DNA of 64,000 nt, taken from positions 1-64,000 of the forward strand of contig RHPI01002998.1 of assembly GCA_009103225.1 (NCBI GenBank), given 5' to 3'. The position numbers and the translations under genes were made by a program. Below, one piece after another: positions 9,230 through 28,180 of the stretch; the first letter of the stretch is position 1; every line of letters begins with the position of its first letter. The notes under the pieces are model-generated. The model saw only the letters and a list, made by a program, of their open reading frames with translations, did not search any database and was not told the DNA's origin. This stretch comes from Chlorokybus atmophyticus (Eukaryota > Plantae > Mesostigma and Chlorokybus algae).

Positions 9230-12200
9230 AGCTCACTCTCAAACTCACCCAACTTGTCAGCACAGTTTGTCAAGTTGAAAATAGGCTCCCAGGTATTACG
9301 CCATCACCAAGCCACTTGACAAGGTATTCAGTGCGGAAGGTCTTCTTGTACTTCCGGAACCTCTTGCCAACAACTGCCTCAACCTCATACTCGAGGTCTC
9401 CCTCTACCTCACATGGAGGTGGAGGAGGCTGCACCGGGCCATCACTTCTGTATGGCTTCAACAGTGCCTCATGGAACACACTGTGGATTCGCATGCTCTT
9501 TGGCAATTCAAGCCTAAAGGCACGGTCACCAACAGCTGCTGTGATTGTGAACGGCCCTAGCCACCTGGGTAGAAGCTTGCGCACACCACTAGTCTTAAGT
9601 CTAATGTTCTTAGAACTCAGCAAGACCTTGTCTCCTACTTTGAAACCAGCACCAGGCTTGCACAGCCGATCAGCATACATCTTTTGCCGATCTTGGGCTG
9701 CTCTCAAGCAGTCCTTGGCACTTGCCAATGCAGCATGCATCTGCTTTGTAAAGTCTCTAGCCGTTGGCACTTTGCTAAATGGCTGAACTTGCAGAGACAT
9801 TAGTGTCAACGGATGACGACCATAGTTGAGAAGAAACGGGATGCTGTGCGTTGACTCTTGCCATGCATTGTTTACAGCAAACTCGGCCAATGCAAGGTGC
9901 ACATCTCAGTCATCAAACTTAGGTGACGTGTAGTGGCGCAGCACGTTTTCAAGCACCTGGTTTGCACGCTCCGTCTGTCCATCACTCTGTGGATGGTAAG
10001 CAGTGCTCAAGCTCTGCTTAGTTCCCAAGTATTGGCACACAGCCTGCCAGAACTGACTGGTAAATCTGAGATCACGGTCTAATACCAACTCTATAAGTAC
10101 ACCGTGCAATTTAAACATCGTGTTCACAAAAGCATACGCAAACTCTTGCGCGCTCACATCTGTGCGACATGGCTCAAACCGGACCATCTTGGTCAACCGA
10201 TCAACAAAAACAATCATGGCATCATGCCCTTGTTTTGTCTCGGGCAGATCTGTGATCAGATCCATGCTTACACTCTCCCATTGATAGCTTGGGATAGCCA
10301 ACGGCTTAAGTAGCCCTGCTGGCTTGCGGTGTGAGGCCTTGTCACGTTGACAAGTGTCACAACTTTGCACATACTTGGTTGCATCAGCAACCAATGTCGG
10401 CCACCAGTACTGTCGCTGCAGTAACTGGATGCTCTTGATCATGTCCATGTGACCGCTGTATACAGCATTGTGCCTCAAACAAGCATTCTTGCCTAAGTCC
10501 GAGTGCATCTGGCACAATCAACTTGCCCTCGCGGTACCACAACCCTTTGTGACAAGTGATCTTGTCGTCTCCTTGCTTGAGCAGCTTGGCAAACCAGTTG
10601 TCAAATGCATAAGCCCGTGGTAGACGTGCCACAATGTCTTCAACATCAACAGCCAGTGGGTCCTCCCCACTTGCATTGCAAGCTACCATTGGTGCATCAC
10701 CGCTAGCTGCCTTACTGGCAACTGGCAACTCACATGTTGATGGCTGCGTTGATGTACTAGCACCTATGTCATCAGTGCCCACCCTTGACTGCGTGCACGT
10801 GCACGTGTCGTTGCTGCCAATAACAAAGGCGAGCGACTCAAGGGATCTGCCACATTCACCCTACCTGGACGATACACCCAAGTAAAGTTGAAACGCGACA
10901 AAAACTCAGCCCACCTTGCTTGTCTTTGGGACAGGGTTGGTTGGGTCTGAAAGAACACAAGTGGGTTGTGATCAGTAATCACCGTGAACCCACCTTCCAC
11001 CCCCTCCAGATAGCAGCGCCACTCCTGTAGCGCATGAACCACTCCCAACAACTCTTGTCCAGTTGTGGTATAGTTTTTCTCAGCAGGAGAGAGCTTCTTG
11101 CTCAAGTACGCAAGAGGGTGTCCGTCCTGAAGCAACACAGCTCCCGTGCCATCTAAAGATGCATCGCTAATCACCTCAAAGGCCTGGTGAAGTCTGGCAA
11201 CTGTAACACATGTGCTGACACCAGAGCCTCTTTGATAGAGTCAAAGGCAACATGTTGCCCGTGTCCCCACCTCCACACAACCTTGTCACGTAGCAAGTTT
11301 GTGAGAGAAGCAACTCGCGATGAGTATCCAAGGATGTACTTCCGGAAATACTTGCTTAGCCCCAAGAATGCTCGCAGCTCATGCACGTTCTTGGGTGCGG
11401 GCCATTCTTGGACCTTAGCAACCTTCTTGGGGTCAGGGCGCACGCCCTCCTTGCTTACAATGTGCCCCAAGAACTCAAGTTCCGTCTTCCCAAACTCACA
11501 CTTGGGCATATACGCAAAGAACTTGTTCGCACGCAGCGTTTCAAGAACCTCACGCATATGTGTAACATGTGACTTAGGGTCTTTTACTGACGACCATGAT
11601 GTCATCCAAGTACACAAGTATTGTCTTCCCAATCAGCTCGTGAAACACACTGTTCATTATAGCTTGAAAGGTAGCTGGCGCATTCGTTAGCCCAAATGGC
11701 AGCACTTTGTACTGAAAGTGTCCCACATGCGTTCTAAACGCTGTCCTGGCACATCTTCCGGTGTGATCCGGATCTGGTGGTACCCACTGATCAAGTCCAA
11801 GGAGCTGAACACTGAGGCCCCGCTCAGTTGATCAAGCAAATCATCTATCCTTGGCAACGGATACCTATTCTTAATGGTAAGCTTCTTCAAGGCCCTATAG
11901 TCCACGCACATGCGCAGTCTGCCGTCCTTCTTAGGTACGAACAGAATGGGTGCTCCGAAGGGAGAGCTACTTGGCTCAATCAATCCCTTCGCAAGCAAGG
12001 CCTTGATTTGCCTCTCCATGTCCGCAAACTCAGCTGGACTTAGCCTATACACAGGCCTAAATGGAGGTTGTCCTCCTGATACGAGAGGAATAGTGTGCCA
12101 CACTTCCCGCTCAGGAGGCAACTCAGGCAACTCAGCTCGAAACACATCACAATACTCATGCAGCAGAGCGTCAAGTGCATTGTCATGTGAGCTGTTAACA

Positions 12201-12775
12201 GTCTCTCACCGGGTGGAGTGGTGCCCTCATCGTTGGCAAGTGGCTTGACGAGGACCAGAAGAGGTTCAGCACCTCTCCGCACAGCTCTTTTCACCTGCAT
12301 GGCACTCAACAACAGAGGGAACACATCACTTGATGTGTCACCGTAAGTAGAGGGCATGACATCACACCCTTCAGCTCTCAGGGTCAGACGCCCTCGCCCT
12401 TTGCGCACGCTGCAAAGGCCTGTGTCTGCATCCGTGCGCAGGCCATTAGCACGCTCCCATCGAGCACCAAGAATGACATCAACACCTGGTACCTCAACTG
12501 GCACAACCAAGAACCTCAGTTGAGCATGATAGCCTTGCACGCAAAGACAGATGCACGGACCCTTTGACTGGGATCTCATGCTCATCAAGTGAGGTCACTG
12601 CCTCACTTGCCTTCTCAATATGAATGCCAAGACGCCGCACCAGAGACTCACTTACAAAGTTCTCCGGTGTACCAGTATCTAGTATCAGAGTAGCTGATAC
12701 TCGTGCAACTGACGCCTTGAACAACCATGTAAGGTCCAAGTGATTTCCCCGGTGGAGAACAGGCGGGTCATACAT
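9230..12775 (-). pseudogene. pol: Frameshifted pol: aspartic protease, RT, RNase H, integrase, GPY/F and chromodomain
   Basis: Protease LILDTGTPENFVS (12494-12775). [45 protein letters not shown]. RNase H DASLDGTGAVL..NYTTTGQELLGVV. Integrase WESVSMDLITDLP..YHPQSDGQTERAN. Chromodomain EYEVEAVV..EYLVKWLG, continuing in another frame as NTWEPIFNL. Split over many ORFs by frameshifts. Confidence 0.95.
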
Positions 12776-13124
12776 GACACGTACATAGCACCATATGCCA
12801 GTTTATGACTTGTTAATGCCCTGAATGACTTGCATACCCTTTGTAAAGGACGACCATGGTACTCTATACGCGGGCACAATGACACATGCACTTGTGTTAT
12901 GCGGACTTTGCTCTTGCACACAACATAGTGCTTGAGCATTGTTGACAACTTGTCAAAGGGCGCGTTGAGCAGCACTTGCTTGCTCACACAGTCATGCATC
13001 AGAAATTCGGAGTCAACAGGCACACCCACATCATTTTCCCACACAGCAACATCGCATGTCAACATAGAAGCATGTGGATTGCCAACAGTCATCTACTAGT
13101 AGGACAGCTCTCCACCCCGTGTTC

Positions 13125-14123
13125 CTATGGGACAGGCTTGTCGTTGGAGAGGTTGGGGCAGTTCGCCACGCGGTGGCCTTTCTCCCCGCACTTGAGACAC
13201 AGTCCGGCTTTGAAGCGTGCATTGCTCAGCTCCACGCAGACTCCGGGAATGCTGGTAGCGCTTCTTATTGACTGGCTAAAAGGGCTGCTTGCCCTTGCCG
13301 TTTGGGCGGCCGCGCTTGCGACTGTTGTTGCCACTGCCACTTCCCACAGCGGGAGTGGTCGAGCTCGAGGGCTGGTTGGCAACAATGGCCAACTTCTGTG
13401 CCTAATTGATCATTCGTTGGCTGTTGTCATACTGCACAGCCGTGCGCTTCATCAAGTCATAGTCAGCATGCGTGAAGGACTCCAGGCCCTCCTTGAAGGT
13501 CAATTACTTTGTCGTTTCCTCGGGCAAAGCCGCCCAGTACTTGTCCATCTTCTCTGCCTCTGACAAGGGCATGTCGGGGCCAACTTCGGCACACACCGAC
13601 TCGAAGTAGACAGTGAAGTCCTCAATGGACTGATTGGGCTTGACTTTCAAGCGTCTCAACTTGTTACGCGCCTTCTGTGACGGGTTTACACCCCCGTAGG
13701 CCTGCAACATAGCAGTCTCAAACACGTCAAGGCTTGCGACATCCTTGCCAGCAGCCTCAAGACGTGGGGAAGCCCCTTCCCACATGCGGGCAGCACTTCC
13801 CCGCAAGTAGGATGCAAAAAGCGACACCGCTTTGGCCTCAAGCCCAGGCAATACCTCAGCGGCATGCAACACACGCTTACAACCAGAAGGCAACCAGAAG
13901 GGTAGTCACGCACGGCAACACCAAGATCCTTGCCCTTCCCATTATGGGCACCGGAGAAGAACTCCAAGTGTGGCATCATCTTGTGGGTGTTTGCGGCTGC
14001 CATCTTGGCTAGCTGCTGCTCGTGTTGCTCCTTCATGGAGGCATTGGCCGTGACCATGGCTTGCACCTGGTTTTGCAGCTCTATCACTTGGGCCGCGAGT
14101 GCGTTGGCATCTGGATCAGTCAT
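13125..14123 (-). pseudogene. gag: Frameshifted gag with CCHC zinc knuckle
   Basis: Retrotrans_gag-like YLRGSAARMWE...SQKARNKLRRLKV..QSIEDFTVYF, plus CLKCGEKGHRVANC, in different frames. Confidence 0.9.
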
Positions 14124-16617: not shown

Positions 16618-19600
16618 GGGTCAAATGCTCTTATTTCGGCGCCTGCCCTTATATCGGCGATGGCGGTTTTTTGAGCGTTGTCTGCGCTGTTTTGATTGGA
16701 TTGGCTCTTGTGGGCTGTTAGCTACGTTCCATATTGACCGTCCAATTCAATTGGCATCGCATTTGAAGCAGTATAGCGGGAGATATGAAATTTCAAATAT
16801 ACATAGTTTAGGTAAAATGCATGTTAGCATCTTGTAACTGGAACAACTTTTGAATGGCAATGCCTTTTGGGGTGTGGTTTGTTGCAACGCTCGAGTTACT
16901 TAACAAAGCAACTTGTCATAGATTTTCAGCCTAATTGAATAAGATTTGAGCAAGTTAGTGTGGCAAGCCTATCGCGTGTCGTTGTAACATCTTTGGAATT
17001 TATAATAGCTATAACCCTTGAATGGGGGTAGCTATTAACGTGGAGTTTGTTGCATGGCTTTAGTAAATAGGAAATACAACTCATCACAAAGTTGCAGCCT
17101 ATTTAGATAGGAAACAAAAAAGTTAGTGTGCCACTCATAACGCAACCAATTGTAAAGTGCAAACTATCGTGGATGGGGGTGTTTGCTGCTTGTCGTAGCG
17201 CGTGTGAGTTGTTGGTTTGGCTAAATGTTAGTGTTGTGCTGAGTGTTAGCTGCTACTTTGCGTGGATGCAAGTAGTTGGGGACATTGCTGGCATGCAAGT
17301 TGCTGTGTGAGCACACGAACTTGGTGGGAGGGAGTTGCATTGCAAGGAGGCTATGCCTACACAAGTAAGTTGCTGTTTACTACGCTAGGCTGATGCTATG
17401 CTTGTCTACTATTGGGCTCAAAGGTCTTCTCATCCTCGCCCATGTGGTTCACCTATTGCCAGCATATTACTATGCCTTATCTCAAGCACTCTGTTGGCAG
17501 GTGAGAAGGACTGCAGGCAGTGCCAAACGCATCACCAACAAACAGGTTCAGCTGCGCGCAAAGGCACAGCTGAACCATTACAAGAGGGGGCCATACATGA
17601 AAAATAAGGAGACAAAAGCACTGCTGCCCAAGGTGCGAGAGGCCATCCAAGCTGTGCAGCAGGGCTGCATGTCTGCGTGTGAGGCTGCAAGAGAGGTTGG
17701 CCTGCCAAAGTCAACCATGAAGGACTACGTTGCTCACCCTGCACGCTTAGACAAATACAAGTGAGTTCTGGTTCTGTGCATGTCACCTGTTACATGCTTG
17801 TGAGTGCCATTGTGCAAGGGGTCATGCTTGCACATGTTATGTTTCAGATGAGCGGGGAGGCCTACCTTGCTTACTGTAGAAGAGGAGTGCAAAGTGGTGC
17901 AGTTACTTACATGGCAGAATGATAGTGGGTGTGCCATGACGCAGTTAGACATCCAGGTGCATGTAGGCAAATTGCTCTTCAACGATGCAAGACGACTGCA
18001 GCTCAAAGATGGCATACTTGGTGCAAGATGGGTCCGCCTCTTCATGAAGGGGCACAAGCTTAGCAAGCGTAAAGCAGAAGCTGTCGATGCCAGCAGGCGT
18101 CACAGCTTTCGAAGGTGGATTGTCAAGGATTATTTTAAGCGCCTGAAGGAGGTCCTTGACTTCATGAAGATTGGGCCTAACCGTATCATCTCCTGCGACG
18201 AGATAGGCATTAAGCCAGACTCCACCTTGAAAAACACACAAGTCATAGTGAAAAGGTTAGTGTTATGCACGTGGTGTAAGTTGCAGCTTGACTACTAACA
18301 CAACACATGACTGACACATACCTCTGTGTACAGCAATTCCAGATATGCACAACTGGCTATATCTGAAGCGAGGCAGCACATAACATTGATGGCAGCGTGT
18401 CACTACAGCTGGAGTTGCAATCCCTCCCACAACAGTCCTAACAGGCAAGCATATCTATCCAGAATGGGGAGACGCTTTTGACCTGCCTGTTGCTAGCCTC
18501 AGCTGCTAAGAAAATGCATGGATGACTACTGAGCACTTCTCCACGTGGATTGACTACCTGCAGCTCAACATGCCTGATGGTACTAATTCTTCTAATCCTG
18601 CTCTGCTGATCTGTGATGGACACGTTAGCCGGTACAATGTTAGTACGATAGACAAGTGCAAGGACATGGGACTGGAGATCCTTGTGCTCCCGCCACACAC
18701 GACACGCAGGCTGCAAATGCTGGACGTGGCATGCTTCAGCAGCTTTTAATTTGTGTACAAGAAGGAGTATCAAGCATGGCTCAACACGCACATGCATGTA
18801 AGAGGGCTACCTAACGAAGACTCTTGAGCATCTTTCTGAAGATGCTCAAGCCATGCTTTGTGCAAGGGCTGAGTGCAAGCAACATACTAGCAGGCTTCAA
18901 GGCATGCGGTAAGCATGCATGCAGTAACACATAATCGTGCATGCATGCATGCAACTCAACCTACATGTCTATGCAGGCATATCACCTTGGAATGATGCAG
19001 CAGTGGACAAGTACCTACCCAAAAAGCCACCAAAGGGGCTGCTTGATGTATTGGCAGCTGCACTGGACGAAGGCAGCAACGACCCTGCAGACATGGAGGA
19101 GGAGACCAATGCTAGTCTGGAGACAGAGGGTTCAGCTGCCAACGCCAGTCGATAACTGCAAAGAAGAAATGCAAAGTGGGGGTGAGGCCAGCAACGGCAG
19201 AATGGTTGACACATGCAGAAATACGCAACAGGCAGAACCAGCTTGAGGAGGAGAGAAGGCTTGAGAAAGAGGCCATCCAGCAGAGGAAGGAAGCCCGTGC
19301 AGCATCAGCAGAACAGCGAGCTCCTGCTGCAGCAGAGAAAGCTGAGGCTGCTGCAGCAAGGTGAGAGGAACAAGCCAGAGGCAGCAGCAGAGCATGCAAA
19401 CAAACAAGCAAGCAAGGAAGCAGGCAAAAGCAGCGTAGACAGCAGCAAGACAAGCTGCTGAAGCACAAGCACAAGCTGAGAGACATGAGGGTAAACGCTT
19501 GGAGGAAGAGCAGCGTGCAAGGATAAGGCAGGAGGCATGCGACTTGCTGGACAGGTGGGATTGGGACCCTATGCTGTGGGTGTTAGAGCATCATCTCCCC

Positions 19601-20263: not shown

Positions 20264-20852
20264 TAGTGCAAGCATGCGAAGACAATATGCTTGGGCAATA
20301 ACATAGCTTGATTCAGACGGCGGTGGTATGATAACAACATAGTATGTTGTTACCATAATGCGGGGTATCATGGTAACAACTGTTCGTATACCTTTGCCAT
20401 CTCACGATTCACATTAATTAACAATTAATAAACTGACAGCCATTTTTTGCTATACAGCAAGTCCATGGCCTAGCTATTCTATCATGCAAGTGCTAGCCAA
20501 CATGCAGTTACCAGGTAACTGCCGTTGCATCATTCTCTGTAGTTCGCTGGTAGAGAGACATGTGCGTGTTCTGGCTGGTGTCTGCTGCAAGTGTGTGCTT
20601 GGCGAGCACTGCTTTCTGCGCGTGCATGACTTATATATTGAATAATAAGCCTTTAAGGGGAGGAAGGCGGCCGCCAGCCCCCACCGTCATCAGACACAGC
20701 GTAACAGCGTTACGTCCCAGCACGAGTCAATTTTAGGCGGGGTGCACCAGCCCACTTGCTGAGCCCTGAGTCCATCCTCCAGCCCACCAGGCCGGAGCGA
20801 CAAGGGCGGGGAGGGCAAGCCAGGCCAGGCCAGGCCAGGCCAGGGGAGCACA

Positions 20853-22325
20853 ATGGCGATGAGGAGCGTGTCGACGTCATCCTCTCACCCTCCGGGCCGG
20901 CCGCTGAGAGTGCAGGCTGAGGCGGCGGGGGTAGCGGCTCCGGGGGTTGCTGAGCAGGAGGATGGGCTGCTCCAGCAACAGCAGCACAAGGAGCTGCCTG
21001 GGCCTAGGCCTGGGCCTGGGCCTGGACCTGGGGTTGGGCCTGGGGCTGGTCTTGGGAAGAGGCTGACCAGACGCTATCGGCGCCCTGGACGCCAGGCCGC
21101 CCTGACCAGGCCGGCCCTGCGGCGACTTGCACGCCGCGCTGGAGTCAAACGGATTTCGGCGGAGGTTCTGCATGCCGCCCGGATCGCCTTACACGTAAAG
21201 ATGGAATAACATGTGCACATGCCAGCGCCAGTACATGCACGCGCATAAGCTCCCCTCCATGCATGCATGCATGCGTGCATCCCTCCACTGGAGGGATGCC
21301 ATGCATGTGTCACCATGTGTCGCCGTGTGCATGCATGCATGCAAAGACATTGACACACACATGCTTCCGAGGCATACATGAGGCATGCAAGCACGCACCC
21401 TGCGTGGCACACAAGCCACCTGCATGCATAGAAGCGACAACTTCAAGCATGCATGCATGCTTGCATGCTTGTTGACCACGCCACGATACACACAATGTGT
21501 GCCCAATCGTGACCTGCCGCGATTGTTGCTTCCGTAACCGTGGTCGTGCCTCGCGTGTGTATCCGGCAGGATTTCCTCCTGGAAGCCGTCCGCGGCTGCG
21601 CCCTGTACGCCGAGTCCGCCCGCCGCCGCACGGTCCTGACGGCCGACGCCGTGCACGCGCTCAAGAGGATGGGGAGGACCATCTACTTCTATGAAGTGGA
21701 CCAGGGGGAACACTACCACCAGCAGCTGGCATGCAGACAACGACGAGGAGGAGGAAGACCAGGAGGACAGCATCAAGGAGGACAGGTGTGTATGTATGTC
21801 ATGCATCGGTGGTGTGCAGACCTGTGGTTGTTGAAGGGCTGTCCTTGTCTTGATGTGTGGTGTGTTGGGTTTGCGTGCATGTGCATGTGCAGCAGGAGGG
21901 GGAGCGACGTCAGTCCAATGCAAGGGAGGTGATTGATGTCGAGAACCTCCAGAACACCACCACCACTACCAACATTAACCACACCACCACCACCACCACC
22001 AACCACCACCACCACAGCAACAGTGGCGAGGGTCATGTGGGTCCCAGTGGGGCAGGAGGAGTCACAAGAGCTCCTGTTGAAGTCAGCCCAGAGAGAGAGG
22101 AGCTCATCCGTCGAGCGATGGGAGACCACATGCGGGGACGCGATAAATGCACGGTACGGTGAGAGTGTGTGTGTGTGGGTGTGTGGGTATGTGACTGTGC
22201 ATGTGTGTGCGTGTGAGAGAGTCATCAGTTGTGATGTGGTGATGTGTGTGCAGGTCGCTGCGGCGCTTGCGGGGTTGAATGAGAGGGTGGAAGTGACACA
22301 GGAAGAACTGCTGAGCGTGGTGAAG
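20853..22325 (+). CDS. Divergent histone H4-like protein with N- and C-terminal extensions (3' end unresolved)
   Basis: Exon 20853-21194 ends GLGKRLTRRYRRPGRQAALTRPALRRLARRAGVKRISAEVLHAARIALH. A phase-0 intron (21195-21569) joins it to DFLLEAVRGCALYAESARRRTVLTADAVHALKRMGRTIYFY. Further in-frame exons at 21893-22153 and 22254-22325. The stop codon was not identified. Confidence 0.85.
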
Positions 22326-23386
22326 GTGAGTAACATAAGGCATGCGGGCGTGTGCTAATGTGTATATGTGCGTGTGCATCATATTCTGCGTATGTGTGTC
22401 CGTGCACGCATGCATGCACGCACGCACGCACGCACGTGGAAGTGTGCTTGTTGTCCTGGCTGTTGTTGATGTTGCACATCAATGCATGCCGGTTCATCCA
22501 TGTACTGCACTCTGCACGTGTACGGTAATATGCGTGCAGACACATGTCCACAACAAGTTGAGCCAGTATGCACACAGATACTGCTATTGTTACTGATACT
22601 TCACATCAACATCATGCTGGCAGAAACTGGACGCAAGCAATGCCATCATGTACATACCCGAAACCAACACCATATACAATCTGGAGCTGTGAGAGCGTTG
22701 ACCCACTCCATTCGTGTTATTCTCGTCAAGTCCTTATGTGACACGTAATACTCTATATGTTGCAGATGTGACATAGCTTAGTGGCAACAGCCAGTCGTGT
22801 AGCTGCTGTAATGCATGTCAATGCAAGAACTGGGGTCATTGTCTATGCCTGGTGTATAGGCTTGACTTCTCAAAGCATGTATGCATTCCACCACCACGAA
22901 CTTTGTAGTCAGCACAAATCGCATCCCTCGAACACATGCACAACCTGCGGTGACTCGTATTGTCGGTTACTGCACACGTCATACGGTGCAGAAGTTGATG
23001 ACAGTGTTTGGGGTATAGTCATGGTAATAACACAGGCCGGAAGATGTCGCAATGATGCCCGCAATTGGCGCGCTCTGTAGGTGCCTGCGTGCCCAATCGG
23101 CATTCGTCCAGTGCATGTGTGCATGTGCGCACGCGTCCAAGTGCCCGAGTGTGTGAGGGCACTTGCATGTCAATGATGATAGTGTTGTGCACGTATGAGG
23201 GCGCTCATGTGTACGCGCATGTGTGTGGCACACACATGTACCTACGGCGGCCTTGACAAAGCCACTCGCAAGCATAACGCTTGCGAGTACGTCATCAACG
23301 TTGTCACAACCAACAATTTGGGAAACTCAAACTTCTTAGAAAAGCTAACACTACTTACAATGAGCTGAGGCATACGTGTGGGTTCA

Positions 23387-25826: not shown

Positions 25827-28180
25827 GTCGTCGTGGCGTTGCCGCAGGGCAGTAGTAGGCGCAGCCAGCAGAGAAGGAGAGCGCAGGTTGAGAGGGATAG
25901 AAACCCCTTTGAGTATAAGTCAGAAAACGAGGCACACGTCTGTGCGTGCTTGAGACAGCACCATGCTGCTGCTGTCTTAGCATGCTCCCATCCCACATGC
26001 TTTGCTTGCTTGCTTGACTTGGTCCGCTGGTTATAGTGACAATGCGTTAGGTTTGTGCAAGTATTACGCAATTTTGCTGGAAGAAGTCAGTTTGTTTGCG
26101 TGTGCAGAGCAATGGCAAAGCCTCCTCCCAGCAGCGGATAGCAATTTGCCAGGCCGGTAAGTGACCCTCTTGCCACGCACATAGACTGGAGTAGAGCTCA
26201 CTTTCCTAGTTGCTAGCTGTACATTAATTGAATCCGGTTTACTGTCACTCAGATTAAAAAACCTGCATTATCAATCAATGTCGCAGTGCACAGTCTATGT
26301 TGATCGTGCATAACTGCATGGTTTCTCATCACAGATTGCATCATGGGAGCATACGCACAAACAGATTATTGTGCACAGACACGAAAGCCCACGCACAGGC
26401 GCGTGCACATGCACGCACGCGCACACGCACGCACGCGCACACGGGGCGTCGTGACTCTGCTTGTTGCACACGTGTTGTTGAAACTTTCCAATGCTAGATT
26501 CAAGACAGGCTGATACTGAAAGAGATTATGCAACTGACCGCACATGCAATATGTTCACAACAGCTGACGTGAAGTTCTCGAGCCCGAAAACCGGCGCTGT
26601 CGGCATTGAACGCCACAAAGAGAAGGCCGAGCCGGGCACATACTGGGGAGAGCAAGGGTAAGGAAAAACAAACAGTAACAGACTTGCATGCTACACCATA
26701 ATACATAGACAAGTAACCTATACTGTGACTTTGTACTATTACACATTATACTATACCAACACTCTATACCACCACACACATGAGGCAGTACTATCATACA
26801 TTCACTCTGTACTACCACTCTATACTGGTACACATGACTACATTTAGTACAGCTGTTGCTTCTCTCAACTGTGGGTATGACATGTTGTGATGATCTGTTG
26901 TTATTCACGCAGGGCGGGGGGCGATGTCGTGTCGGTGACGTTTGACAACGGCGCCGATCAGGTGCAGATCACGGCCGAAGTCGGGGAGAACCTGCTTCGA
27001 GTGGCCGAGCGCGCGGGCGTGTTCTACGCTAACGACGTGAGCTCTGAGTTGTTGTGTCAACTCTGCTGAGGAAAGGCCATACTCTCTAAAGAGTCCTGTT
27101 TCCTACCTGCTGAGTTTGTGCATGCTGTTTGGTCAGGATTTTTGCTTTGAGGGCTCGTGCAATCTGTGCGAAATGGAGGTTGAAGGGGGAGCCCAGGAGG
27201 TAAGTTGAACCACAAGCTTGGTTCTCTTCCCCNNNNNNNNNNNNNNNNNNNNNNNNNNNNNNNNNNNNNNNNNNNNNNNNNNNNNNNNNNNNNNNNNNNN
27301 NNNNNNNNNNNNNNNNNNNNNNNNNNNNNNNNNNNNNNNNNNNNNNNNNNNNNNNNNNNNNNNNNNNNNNNNNNNNNNNNNNNNNNNNNNNNNNNNNNNN
27401 NNNNNNNNNNNNNNNNNNNNNNNNNNNNNNNNNNNNNNNNNNNNNNNNNNNNNNNNNNNNNNNNNNNNNNNNNNNNNNNNNNNNNNNNNNNNNNNNNNNN
27501 NNNNNNNNNNNNNNNNNNNNNNNNNNNNNNNNNNNNNNNNNNNNNNNNNNNNNNNNNNNNNNNNNNNNNNNNNNNNNNNNNNNNNNNNNNNNNNNNNNNN
27601 NNNNNNNNNNNNNNNNNNNNNNNNNNNNNNNNNNNNNNNNNNNNNNNNNNNNNNNNNNNNNNNNNNNNNNNNNNNNNNNNNNNNNNNNNNNNNNNNNNNN
27701 NNNNNNNNNNNNNNNNNNNNNNNNNNNNNNNNNNNNNNNNNNNNNNNNNNNNNNNNNNNNNNNNNNNNNNNNNNNNNNNNNNNNNNNNNNNNNNNNNNNN
27801 NNNNNNNCCCCGATCAATGTGTGCGCGCGTGTCCGTGTGTGCAAGCGATGAGTTGAAGTTGGCCAGTCAACTTCTTCACTCACTCGTCTAGTCATCTGTT
27901 CATCCACCATATCGTACGACCCAATGTTCTGGTTTCAAGCATCAGTTGTCAATGGAGTAATCCATGTGCAGGTTGGGTATCGTGCCATGGGCACCAATGA
28001 ACTCGTGCGCAGCTGTCTTTGCCCGGTAAGCTTGCTTGTAGTCAGTGACAAAATGTTGTGCACAGCTGCACTGTTGCATATGTGACATGCGCGTGCACAT
28101 TGCAGGTACCGCGCGACCGTCAAAAGGTCCAAGTGAACCTTATAAACAACGAGGACGTGTGGGGCGAGGACGTTGTGTGA
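25791..28180 (+). CDS. 2Fe-2S ferredoxin-like protein, probably plastid-targeted
   Basis: Exons VSVTFDNG..AEVGENLLRVAERAGV (26912-27054), DFCFEGSCNLCEMEV (C-x4-C-x2-C), ELVRSCLCP (4th Cys) and VPRDRQKVQVNLINNEDVWGEDVV*. Ala/Ser/Arg-rich transit-peptide-like N-terminus. One intron contains the N gap. Confidence 0.85.
27233..27807. other. Assembly gap (575 N)
   Basis: Run of N flanked by short C runs on both sides. Confidence 1.

What the first reader, a model, noticed from the sequence alone, without database searches (positions are those of the whole stretch)
20853..22325. Highly divergent, intron-split histone H4-like protein with long N- and C-terminal extensions
H4 is normally almost invariant. 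Here the spliced fold is only about half identical to canonical H4 by manual alignment, yet keeps PA.RRLARR.GVKRIS, Y.E.ARR.TV and ALKR.GRT.Y. The tail keeps GLGK (K12-like), but K5/K8 are replaced by a PG repeat and K16/K20 appear lost. About 60 extra N-terminal residues and more than 130 C-terminal residues (Gly/Gln-rich, Thr/His runs, then a helical segment ending VTQEELLSVVK) are fused. H4 variants are rare (e.g. trypanosome H4V, hominid H4G), so this could be an undescribed variant or a histone-fold subunit of a chromatin complex.
Basis: partly seen in the sequence, partly recalled or inferred. Interest (0 to 1): 0.78.

Follow-up and report, generated by a model that had tools for sequence, protein, structure and literature searches.

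The report
Divergent histone H4 fused to winged-helix domain
A green-alga gene appears to encode a very divergent histone H4, normally one of the least variable proteins, joined by a floppy linker to a small winged-helix domain resembling the tail of replication factor MCM3. There is no RNA evidence or orthologue yet to show that it is used.

Summary
A clean five-exon reading (20853-22692, + strand, all GT-AG, all phase 0) gives a 319-aa protein.

- **H4 part.** Residues 57-155 are derived from H4. They are 50.5% identical to canonical H4 over 95 residues. They match only H4 among solved structures (E 6e-21). They fold as an intact histone fold (pLDDT above 90) whose 50 best structural matches are all nucleosomal H4. 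The DNA-contact arginines are kept. Of the tail lysines only K12 remains; K16 and K20 are arginine.

There is a fifth exon. The last 69 residues, spanning exons 3-5, form a winged-helix domain. Its only sequence-family match is the MCM3 C-terminal winged helix (Pfam PF23191, E 5e-5, just under the curated cut-off). Reversed and shuffled controls gave nothing.

- **Relatives.** An exhaustive search of 1.84 billion proteins with exon 1 found no protein of this architecture. Metagenome and viral scans found none either. No RNA run was listed.

- **Doubts.** Codon bias at the end of exon 2 favours the +1 frame. That frame has its own ATG and a donor 4 nt downstream, so the winged-helix part might be a separate ORF. 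Decay of a chimeric gene is not excluded.

Other notes of this scan report several other odd histone genes on other DNA of this genome, probably Chlorokybus.

The parts
20632..20639 (+). TATA-like motif about 215 nt upstream of the ATG (possible promoter element)
   Evidence: Pattern search; inference only.
20853..21020 (+). Exon 1, first part: 56-aa N-terminal extension. It has a Ser/Arg/Pro-rich start, a Gln run and a Pro-Gly repeat. The ATG has A at -3 and G at +4, with in-frame stops upstream.
   Evidence: No family match.
21021..21194 (+). Exon 1, second part: H4 tail equivalent (GLGK, then RRYRR in place of K16-K20), helix alpha1, loop L1 and the first half of alpha2.
   Evidence: PDB phmmer hits H4 only; alignment to H4; AF2 model.
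21195..21569 (+). Intron 1 (375 nt, GT-AG, phase 0), between the equivalents of H4 K59 and V60; rich in (TGCA)n.
21570..21692 (+). Exon 2, first part: second half of alpha2, loop L2, alpha3 and the RTIY C-terminal strand of the H4 fold; GC3 0.93.
   Evidence: PDB phmmer hits H4 only.
21693..21785 (+). Exon 2 tail: start of the linker, with an uncertain reading frame. Frame 0 gives a Gly/Gln/Arg-rich stretch (GC3 0.42). Frame +1 gives an acidic stretch from the ATG at 21691 (GC3 about 0.87). Two donors lie 4 nt apart: CAG|GTGTGT at 21785|21786 and TGT|GTATGT at 21789|21790.
21893..22084 (+). Exon 3, first part: low-complexity linker with Thr, Asn and His runs.
   Evidence: No family match.
22085..22153 (+). 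Exon 3, last part: helix 1 of the winged-helix domain.
   Evidence: Pfam PF23191 alignment covers it; AF2 topology.
22254..22325 (+). Exon 4: helices 2 and 3 of the winged-helix domain.
22624..22692 (+).
   Evidence: The Pfam alignment reaches profile position 75 of 77 inside this exon.
22807..22811 (+). TGTAA, a green-alga-type poly(A) signal candidate 115 nt after the stop. No histone 3' stem-loop is present.
   Evidence: pattern; Rfam: no match in the whole window.

Best explanation
This is a lineage-restricted, intron-containing, non-stem-loop gene for a chimeric histone H4 variant, a 'macro-H4' in layout. Its parts, in order, are:
- a 56-aa N-terminal extension;
- a complete but 50%-diverged H4 tail and histone fold;
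- a low-complexity linker of about 95 aa;
- a C-terminal winged-helix domain of MCM3 type.

Shown here: the H4 descent, the intact fold, the retention of the DNA-contact arginines, and the winged-helix topology with MCM3-type profile similarity.

Inferred: the fold pairs with an H3-type partner by the usual handshake and sits on DNA. The tail cannot be acetylated at K5, K8 or K16, or methylated at K20, because those positions are V, A, R and R. The tethered winged helix displays a protein-docking surface on chromatin. In MCM3 this domain binds ORC-Cdc6.

The gene probably arose by joining an H4 copy to the 3' exons of an MCM3-like copy in a transposon-rich region.
For: **Gene model.** Five exons, all GT-AG, all phase 0, 319 codons with no stop.

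**H4 descent.**
- PDB sequence hits are H4 only.
- 50.5% identity with only two indels, both in frame.
- Every column that is invariant across 22 H4 and H4-like sequences is kept.
- The AF2 model has helices at 30-39, 47-74 and 82-91 with pLDDT above 90.
- The 50 best Foldseek matches are all nucleosomal H4, at rmsd about 2 A over about 72 residues.

**Winged helix.**
- PF23191 at E 5.1e-5 covers profile positions 4-75 of 77 across two splice junctions.
- Reversed and shuffled controls gave no hit.
- The topology is H-H-H-E-E.
- Structural matches are almost all winged helices, at Z 5-6.

**Joining of the two parts.**
- Exon 3 has no ATG ahead of the domain, so it needs an upstream coding exon.
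- The donor CAG|GT of the fusion model fits the usual consensus.

**Variant-type gene.** There is no histone stem-loop.

**MCM3 winged helix.** It is sufficient to bind ORC-Cdc6 (PMC7395460).
Against: - No RNA run was listed, so no junction is verified.
- No orthologue or protein of this architecture was found, so constraint cannot be measured.
- The last 31 codons of exon 2 have GC3 0.42 in the fusion frame against about 0.87 in the +1 frame.
- In neutral-drift simulations 15% of runs stay stop-free at 50% identity, and the observed replacements are only marginally more conservative than neutral ones (5% of runs reach them).
- Long chance ORFs occur on the opposite strand of this same stretch, so openness alone is weak evidence.
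- The Pfam hit is below the curated cut-off (23.8 against 27 bits).
- The winged-helix model has pLDDT of only 61.
Confidence: 0.47

Rival explanations
1. It is a non-functional or decaying chimeric gene. An H4 copy and MCM3-like 3' exons were thrown together in a transposon-rich region. They have drifted and remain open by chance or by recency.
For: - No relatives and no RNA.
- A broken chromovirus lies at 9.3-13.9 kb and a pogo-like transposase at 17.4-19.2 kb, just upstream.
- The frame-bias switch in exon 2 looks like a 1-nt indel.
- The substitution pattern is only weakly non-neutral.
- Other notes of this scan describe decayed transposon-borne histone genes in this genome (not tested here).
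Against: - About 100 substitutions in 291 nt are accompanied by only two indels, both in frame. By the usual indel-to-substitution ratios of pseudogenes (general knowledge) several frameshifts would be expected.
- All eight splice sites are intact.
- All invariant H4 columns and the DNA-contact arginines are kept.
- The fold is predicted with high confidence.
- The winged-helix profile match survives across three exons.
Confidence: 0.27
2. There are two products, not a fusion. A 166-aa protein with an acidic stretch, linker and winged helix starts at the ATG at 21691 in the +1 frame and uses the donor at 21789|21790. The H4-like ORF is a separate or overlapping cistron that, with that donor, stops in exon 3 near 21932.
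For: - The +1 frame has an ATG at 21691, GC3 of 0.8-0.9, and a GTATGT donor in phase 0 with exon 3.
- An acidic stretch followed by a winged helix resembles the layout of the MCM3 C-terminus (my recollection, not tested).
- Another note of this scan proposes a bicistronic locus in this genome (not tested).
Against: - The ATG at 21691 lies about 460 nt of spliced mRNA after the first ATG, with other ATGs between, so it needs its own promoter or reinitiation.
- The exon side of that donor (TGT|GT) is poorer than CAG|GT.
- GA-rich repeats give a periodic GC3 signal in any frame.
- An H4 ORF that ends in out-of-frame exon 3 sequence would carry a junk tail.
Confidence: 0.16
3. It is a histone-fold subunit of a non-nucleosomal complex of TAF6, CENP-T or CENP-S (MHF) type rather than an H4 derivative.
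For: Weak Pfam hits to CENP-T_C (E 5e-4), Bromo_TP and TAF.
Against: - Canonical H4 gets the same Pfam hits with higher scores.
- All PDB sequence hits and the 50 best fold hits are H4.
- The H4 tail (GLGK and the basic patch) is present too.
Confidence: 0.03
4. Exons 3-5 are the real 3' end of the organism's MCM3 gene, and the H4-like gene is nested in one of its introns.
For: - MCM3-type winged helix.
- A nested H4 gene is noted elsewhere in this genome (not tested).
Against: - No MCM AAA+ motif occurs in any frame of the 64-kb window.
- Transposons fill the 20 kb upstream.
- The profile score is lower than expected for a true MCM3.
Confidence: 0.03

Closest known systems
Canonical histone H4
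   Same: The tail and histone fold are collinear over H4 residues 3-99. The alpha1-L1 block, the L2 RRxTV motif and the ALKRxGRTxY motif are kept. The predicted fold superposes on nucleosomal H4.
   Different: - Only 50.5% identity.
- A 2-aa deletion before alpha1.
- K5, K8, K16, K20, K31, K59, K77 and K79 are replaced, mostly by Arg.
- A 56-aa N-terminal and an about 165-aa C-terminal extension.
- Four introns and no 3' stem-loop.
Ascomycete H4E variant (PMC10878826)
   Same: Both are H4 paralogues with their own intron pattern, N- and C-terminal extensions and a changed Lys/Arg distribution. H4E binds H3 but has no detectable phenotype.
   Different: - As described in the paper's abstract, H4E differs from H4 mainly in its N- and C-terminal extensions; no added folded domain is mentioned there.
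- It is fungal and conserved across a subphylum.
- No specific sequence relation to this protein was found: canonical H4 scores higher than any divergent H4-like hit.
Oryza H4.V, trypanosome H4.V, hominid H4G (PMC7617672, PMC13052989, PMC6895281)
   Same: All are lineage-restricted H4 variants encoded apart from the canonical genes.
   Different: Those variants stay close to H4 in sequence and size (general knowledge, not tested here). None has a fused globular domain.
MCM3 C-terminal winged-helix domain (Pfam PF23191; PMC7395460)
   Same: The profile match covers the full domain length at E 5e-5. The topology is three helices plus a hairpin. The domain sits at the very C-terminus after a low-complexity linker.
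   Different: - It is not attached to an MCM AAA+ core.
- Its score is below Pfam's gathering cut-off.
- It has no pairwise similarity to solved MCM3 chains.
- Binding to ORC-Cdc6 is untested.
macroH2A (core histone + linker + globular domain)
   Same: The layout is the same: a core-histone fold followed by a flexible linker and a non-histone folded module at the C-terminus (general knowledge).
   Different: A different histone (H2A) and a different appended domain (macro). MacroH2A is conserved widely and its function is established. This is an analogy only.

Membership tests
Histone H4 | Best sequence matches are H4 over the whole tail and fold | tested here: met
   PDB phmmer E 6e-21 over H4 residues 8-104, with all 60 listed hits H4. 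Each exon alone also hits only H4. Scores are 68-82 bits against H4 representatives.
Histone H4 | Intact histone fold (alpha1-L1-alpha2-L2-alpha3) | tested here: met
   AF2 with a 22-row alignment gives helices at 30-39, 47-74 and 82-91 with pLDDT above 90. The top 50 Foldseek matches are all nucleosomal H4.
Histone H4 | Near-invariant sequence (canonical H4 is above 90% identical across eukaryotes) | tested here: not met
   48/95 = 50.5% identity, so it is a variant or derivative, not canonical H4.
Histone H4 | Modifiable tail lysines K5, K8, K12, K16, K20 | tested here: not met
   Only K12 is kept. K5 is V, K8 is A, K16 is R and K20 is R.
Histone H4 | DNA-contact and structural residues (R17, P32, R35, R36, R39, R40, G42, V43, R45, R78, T80, D85, R92) | tested here: met
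   All columns that are invariant in the 22-sequence alignment are kept, and the others are seen in the pairwise alignment.
Histone H4 | Pairs with H3 and enters nucleosomes | not testable with these tools
   Needs multimer modelling, reconstitution or ChIP.
Replication-dependent histone gene | Intronless gene with a 3' stem-loop | tested here: not met
   Four introns and no Rfam histone stem-loop in the window.
MCM3 C-terminal winged helix (PF23191) | Profile score at or above the curated cut-off | tested here: not met
   23.8 bits against a cut-off of 27, at E 5.1e-5 with full-length coverage. Reversed and shuffled controls gave no hit. This is a likely relative, not a certified member.
MCM3 C-terminal winged helix (PF23191) | Winged-helix fold | tested here: inconclusive
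   H-H-H-E-E topology, but pLDDT is 61. Winged helices dominate the matches at Z 5-6, a level that can be generic.
MCM3 C-terminal winged helix (PF23191) | Lies at the end of an MCM AAA+ helicase subunit | tested here: not met
   No MCM motifs in any frame of the window. The upstream coding exons are H4-like.
MCM3 C-terminal winged helix (PF23191) | Binds ORC-Cdc6 | not testable with these tools
   Known for yeast Mcm3 (PMC7395460); needs a binding assay here.
TAF6 / CENP-T / CENP-S histone-fold proteins | Closer to those families than to core histones | tested here: not met
   The Pfam hits are weak (at most 20.7 bits) and lower than those of canonical H4 to the same models. None of these proteins is among the 60 PDB hits shown (of 103 at E up to 1).

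The most novel reading that the evidence does not exclude
A nucleosome-borne licensing module. This H4 variant would be built into chromatin with H3 and carry an MCM3-type, ORC-Cdc6-docking winged helix on a long linker. It would mark or tether replication-origin machinery, or act as a decoy for it, directly from the nucleosome. Its tail would be locked in the unacetylated, unmethylatable state.
Probability: 0.1. Interest if true: 0.88.

Novelty: new variant of a known kind. Interest (0 to 1): 0.6.

Why it matters
H4 is the least variable core histone, and only a handful of H4 variants are known. None of them carries an added folded domain.

A core H4 fold covalently linked to a replication-factor-type winged helix would be the H4 counterpart of macroH2A. 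It would give a direct physical link between nucleosome composition and origin licensing or another winged-helix-mediated process.

Other notes of this scan report several odd H2A, H2B and H3 genes in the same genome. Together they suggest that this early-diverging streptophyte alga is a natural laboratory of histone diversification, or of histone-gene capture and decay in transposon-rich DNA. Either reading can be tested with one RNA data set.

Tried and rejected
**Searches that gave nothing useful**
- Pfam on single exon pieces gave nothing; the pieces are too short.
- RNA runs: none was listed. Read laying could therefore not be used.
- The exhaustive representative search with exon 1 gave only ordinary H4, tandem-H4 mispredictions and N-extended H4. 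None matched beyond residue 160 of the model.
- The word search with the winged-helix domain found no candidate, but it sees only proteins of 38-120 aa.
- Metagenome scans found nothing with exon 2. With exon 1 they found two ordinary protist H4 genes. The viral scan found nothing.
- PDB sequence search with the winged-helix domain gave nothing.
- Fold search 'atlas' failed three times.

**Ideas tested and dropped**
- A weak tblastn hit of the C-terminal domain at 50.7 kb contains stop codons and is chance.
- I looked for terminal inverted repeats that would make the gene transposon cargo. There were only (TGCA)n matches and one 11-nt core that does not extend.
- The idea of an H4 gene nested in an MCM3 intron was rejected, because no MCM motifs occur in the window.
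- No micro-intron or phase-1 donor can bring the acidic +1 frame into the H4 frame (reading).

**Steps not taken**
- The full 319-aa spliced protein has no reference, so it was not handed to any search or fold tool. Only the 69-aa and 104-aa domains were typed in.
- The organism name (Chlorokybus) comes from other notes of the scan and was not tested here.

Full report
**Gene model.** Reading the + strand from the ATG at 20853 gives five exons: 20853-21194, 21570-21785, 21893-22153, 22254-22325 and 22624-22692. Every intron starts with GT and ends with AG, and every intron is in phase 0. The joined reading is 319 codons and ends in TGA. The ATG has a good context (A at -3, G at +4) and in-frame stops lie upstream. 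A TATA-like motif sits at 20632 and a TGTAA at 22807.

**The H4 part is real.** Exon 1 alone and exon 2 alone each match only histone H4 among all solved structures, at E about 1e-6.
- The joined 104 residues (model residues 57-160) match H4 at E 6e-21 over H4 residues 8-104, and all 60 listed hits are H4.
- Against canonical H4 the identity is 48 of 95 (50.5%). There is one extra residue in the tail and a 2-residue deletion at the equivalent of N25-I26.
- In an alignment with 21 canonical and divergent H4 sequences, every invariant column is kept.
- AlphaFold2 with that alignment gives helices at 30-39, 47-74 and 82-91 with pLDDT above 90.
- The 50 best Foldseek matches are all H4 chains of nucleosomes, at about 2 A rmsd over about 72 residues.
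- Pfam gives only weak generic histone-fold hits (CENP-T_C, Histone, Bromo_TP, TAF). Canonical H4 gets the same families with higher scores, so these hits do not point to TAF6 or CENP-T.

**Changes from H4.**
- K5 is V, K8 is A, K16 is R, K20 is R, K31 is R, K59 is H, K77 is R and K79 is R.
- K12, K44 and K91 are kept.
- The whole protein has 7 Lys and 37 Arg.

**The C-terminal domain.** The last 69 residues are encoded by the end of exon 3, exon 4 and exon 5.
- They match Pfam PF23191, the MCM3-like winged-helix domain, at E 5.1e-5 and 23.8 bits (cut-off 27). The match covers profile positions 4-75 of 77.
- The reversed sequence and two shuffles gave no hit at E up to 10.
- A single-sequence AlphaFold2 model has low confidence (pLDDT 61) but a helix-helix-helix-strand-strand topology.
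- Its structural matches are almost all winged helices: cullin WHB, Rpa2, Stn1, ESCRT-II and an archaeal MCM C-terminus, at Z 5-6.
- The profile alignment runs through two splice junctions, so exons 3, 4 and 5 are very probably joined as modelled.
- Exon 3 has no ATG before the domain, so it needs an upstream coding exon.
- In yeast the Mcm3 winged helix is sufficient to bind ORC-Cdc6 and docks on Orc2 and Cdc6 (PMC7395460).
- No MCM AAA+ motif occurs anywhere in the window, so these exons are not the tail of a nearby true MCM3 gene.

**Is it one protein?** This is the weak point. The H4 part of exon 2 has GC3 of 0.93. From about 21714 the H4 frame falls to about 0.4, while the +1 frame reads an acidic stretch with GC3 of about 0.87. 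That +1 frame has an ATG at 21691. A second donor, TGT|GTATGT at 21789|21790, lies 4 nt after the donor of the fusion model and puts the +1 frame in phase with exon 3.

Three readings are therefore possible:
- a fusion as assembled (frame 0, donor CAG|GT);
- a fusion with a 1-nt indel, from an assembly error or a recent mutation;
- a separate 166-aa protein with an acidic stretch and the winged helix.

I favour the fusion for three reasons. The first ATG of the transcript opens the H4 frame. The CAG|GT donor is the better one. GA-rich repeats give periodic composition in any frame. Only RNA can decide, and none was listed.

**Is it under selection?** No orthologue could be found.
- The exhaustive search of 1.84 billion representatives with exon 1 gave 58 hits, none better than 1e-8. 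All are ordinary or misjoined H4 with nothing matching beyond model residue 160.
- Metagenome and viral scans gave nothing related.
- The window's own protein is not in those libraries either, so absence among close relatives of this alga means little.
- In a neutral-drift simulation from a GC3-rich H4 gene, about 100 substitutions are needed to reach 50% identity, and 15% of runs stay free of stops.
- The observed replacements are only marginally more conservative than simulated ones; 5% of runs reach the observed value.
- The stronger argument is inferential. That much drift should bring several frameshifting indels, yet only two indels are seen and both are in frame. All eight splice sites and all invariant H4 positions survive.
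- Long chance ORFs on the opposite strand of this very stretch (244 and 187 aa) show that openness alone proves little.

**Surroundings.**
- A broken Ty3/gypsy chromovirus lies at 9.3-13.9 kb on the minus strand, with gag, RT, RNase H, integrase and a chromodomain in different frames.
- A pogo-like transposase with an HTH_psq domain lies at 17.4-19.2 kb on the plus strand.
- I found no terminal repeats that would make the H4-like gene cargo of either element.
- Rfam finds no histone stem-loop or other RNA family in the window.
- Other notes of this scan, which I did not test, take the genome for Chlorokybus. They report canonical H4 genes elsewhere, plus several aberrant H2A, H2B and H3 genes, some beside Helitrons.

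**Comparison with what is known.** The described H4 variants are Oryza H4.V, trypanosome H4.V, hominid H4G and ascomycete H4E. They are lineage-restricted paralogues without an added folded domain. H4E is the nearest in spirit, with extensions, a changed Lys/Arg pattern and its own introns. The nearest in layout is macroH2A, which is an analogy only.

**Verdict.** The most likely reading, at about 47%, is a real chimeric H4 variant carrying an MCM3-type winged helix. The serious rivals are a decaying chimera (about 27%) and a separate winged-helix ORF (about 16%). I class it as a new variant of a known kind.

Noticed in passing
window 9270-13893, minus strand: A Ty3/gypsy chromovirus-type retrotransposon. 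Pfam finds gag, RT, RNase H, integrase, an SH3-like domain and a chromodomain, split over several frames, so it is probably inactive.
   Followed up: partly
window 17393-19155, plus strand: A pogo/Tigger-like transposase gene. It has an HTH_psq domain (E 9e-7) and an apparent (TGCA)n-rich intron near 18910-18975. Its stop lies 1.7 kb upstream of the H4-like ATG, in the same orientation. A Lys/Glu/Ala-rich stretch follows at 19163-19360.
   Followed up: partly
window about 27230-27850: A run of N (assembly gap). The assembly is a draft, which keeps a 1-nt indel error in exon 2 possible.
   Followed up: no
window 21189-21923 and 21773-22336, minus strand: Chance ORFs of 244 and 187 aa lie antisense to the gene and run straight through its introns. 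This warns that open frames are cheap in this TGCA/GT-rich sequence.
   Followed up: no
window 20815-20845: A (CCAGG)n microsatellite lies directly upstream of the start codon, in the presumed 5' UTR.
   Followed up: no
window 20853-20918 (residues 1-22): The first 22 residues are Ser/Arg/Pro-rich, have no acidic residue and end in VQA|E. This resembles a short green-alga organelle transit peptide. I judged this by eye only and ran no predictor.
   Followed up: no
window 21785-21795: Tandem splice donors 4 nt apart (CAG|GTGT|GTATGT). Use of the second would end the H4 frame in exon 3 and open the +1 frame, so alternative splicing could give a fused and a truncated product.
   Followed up: partly
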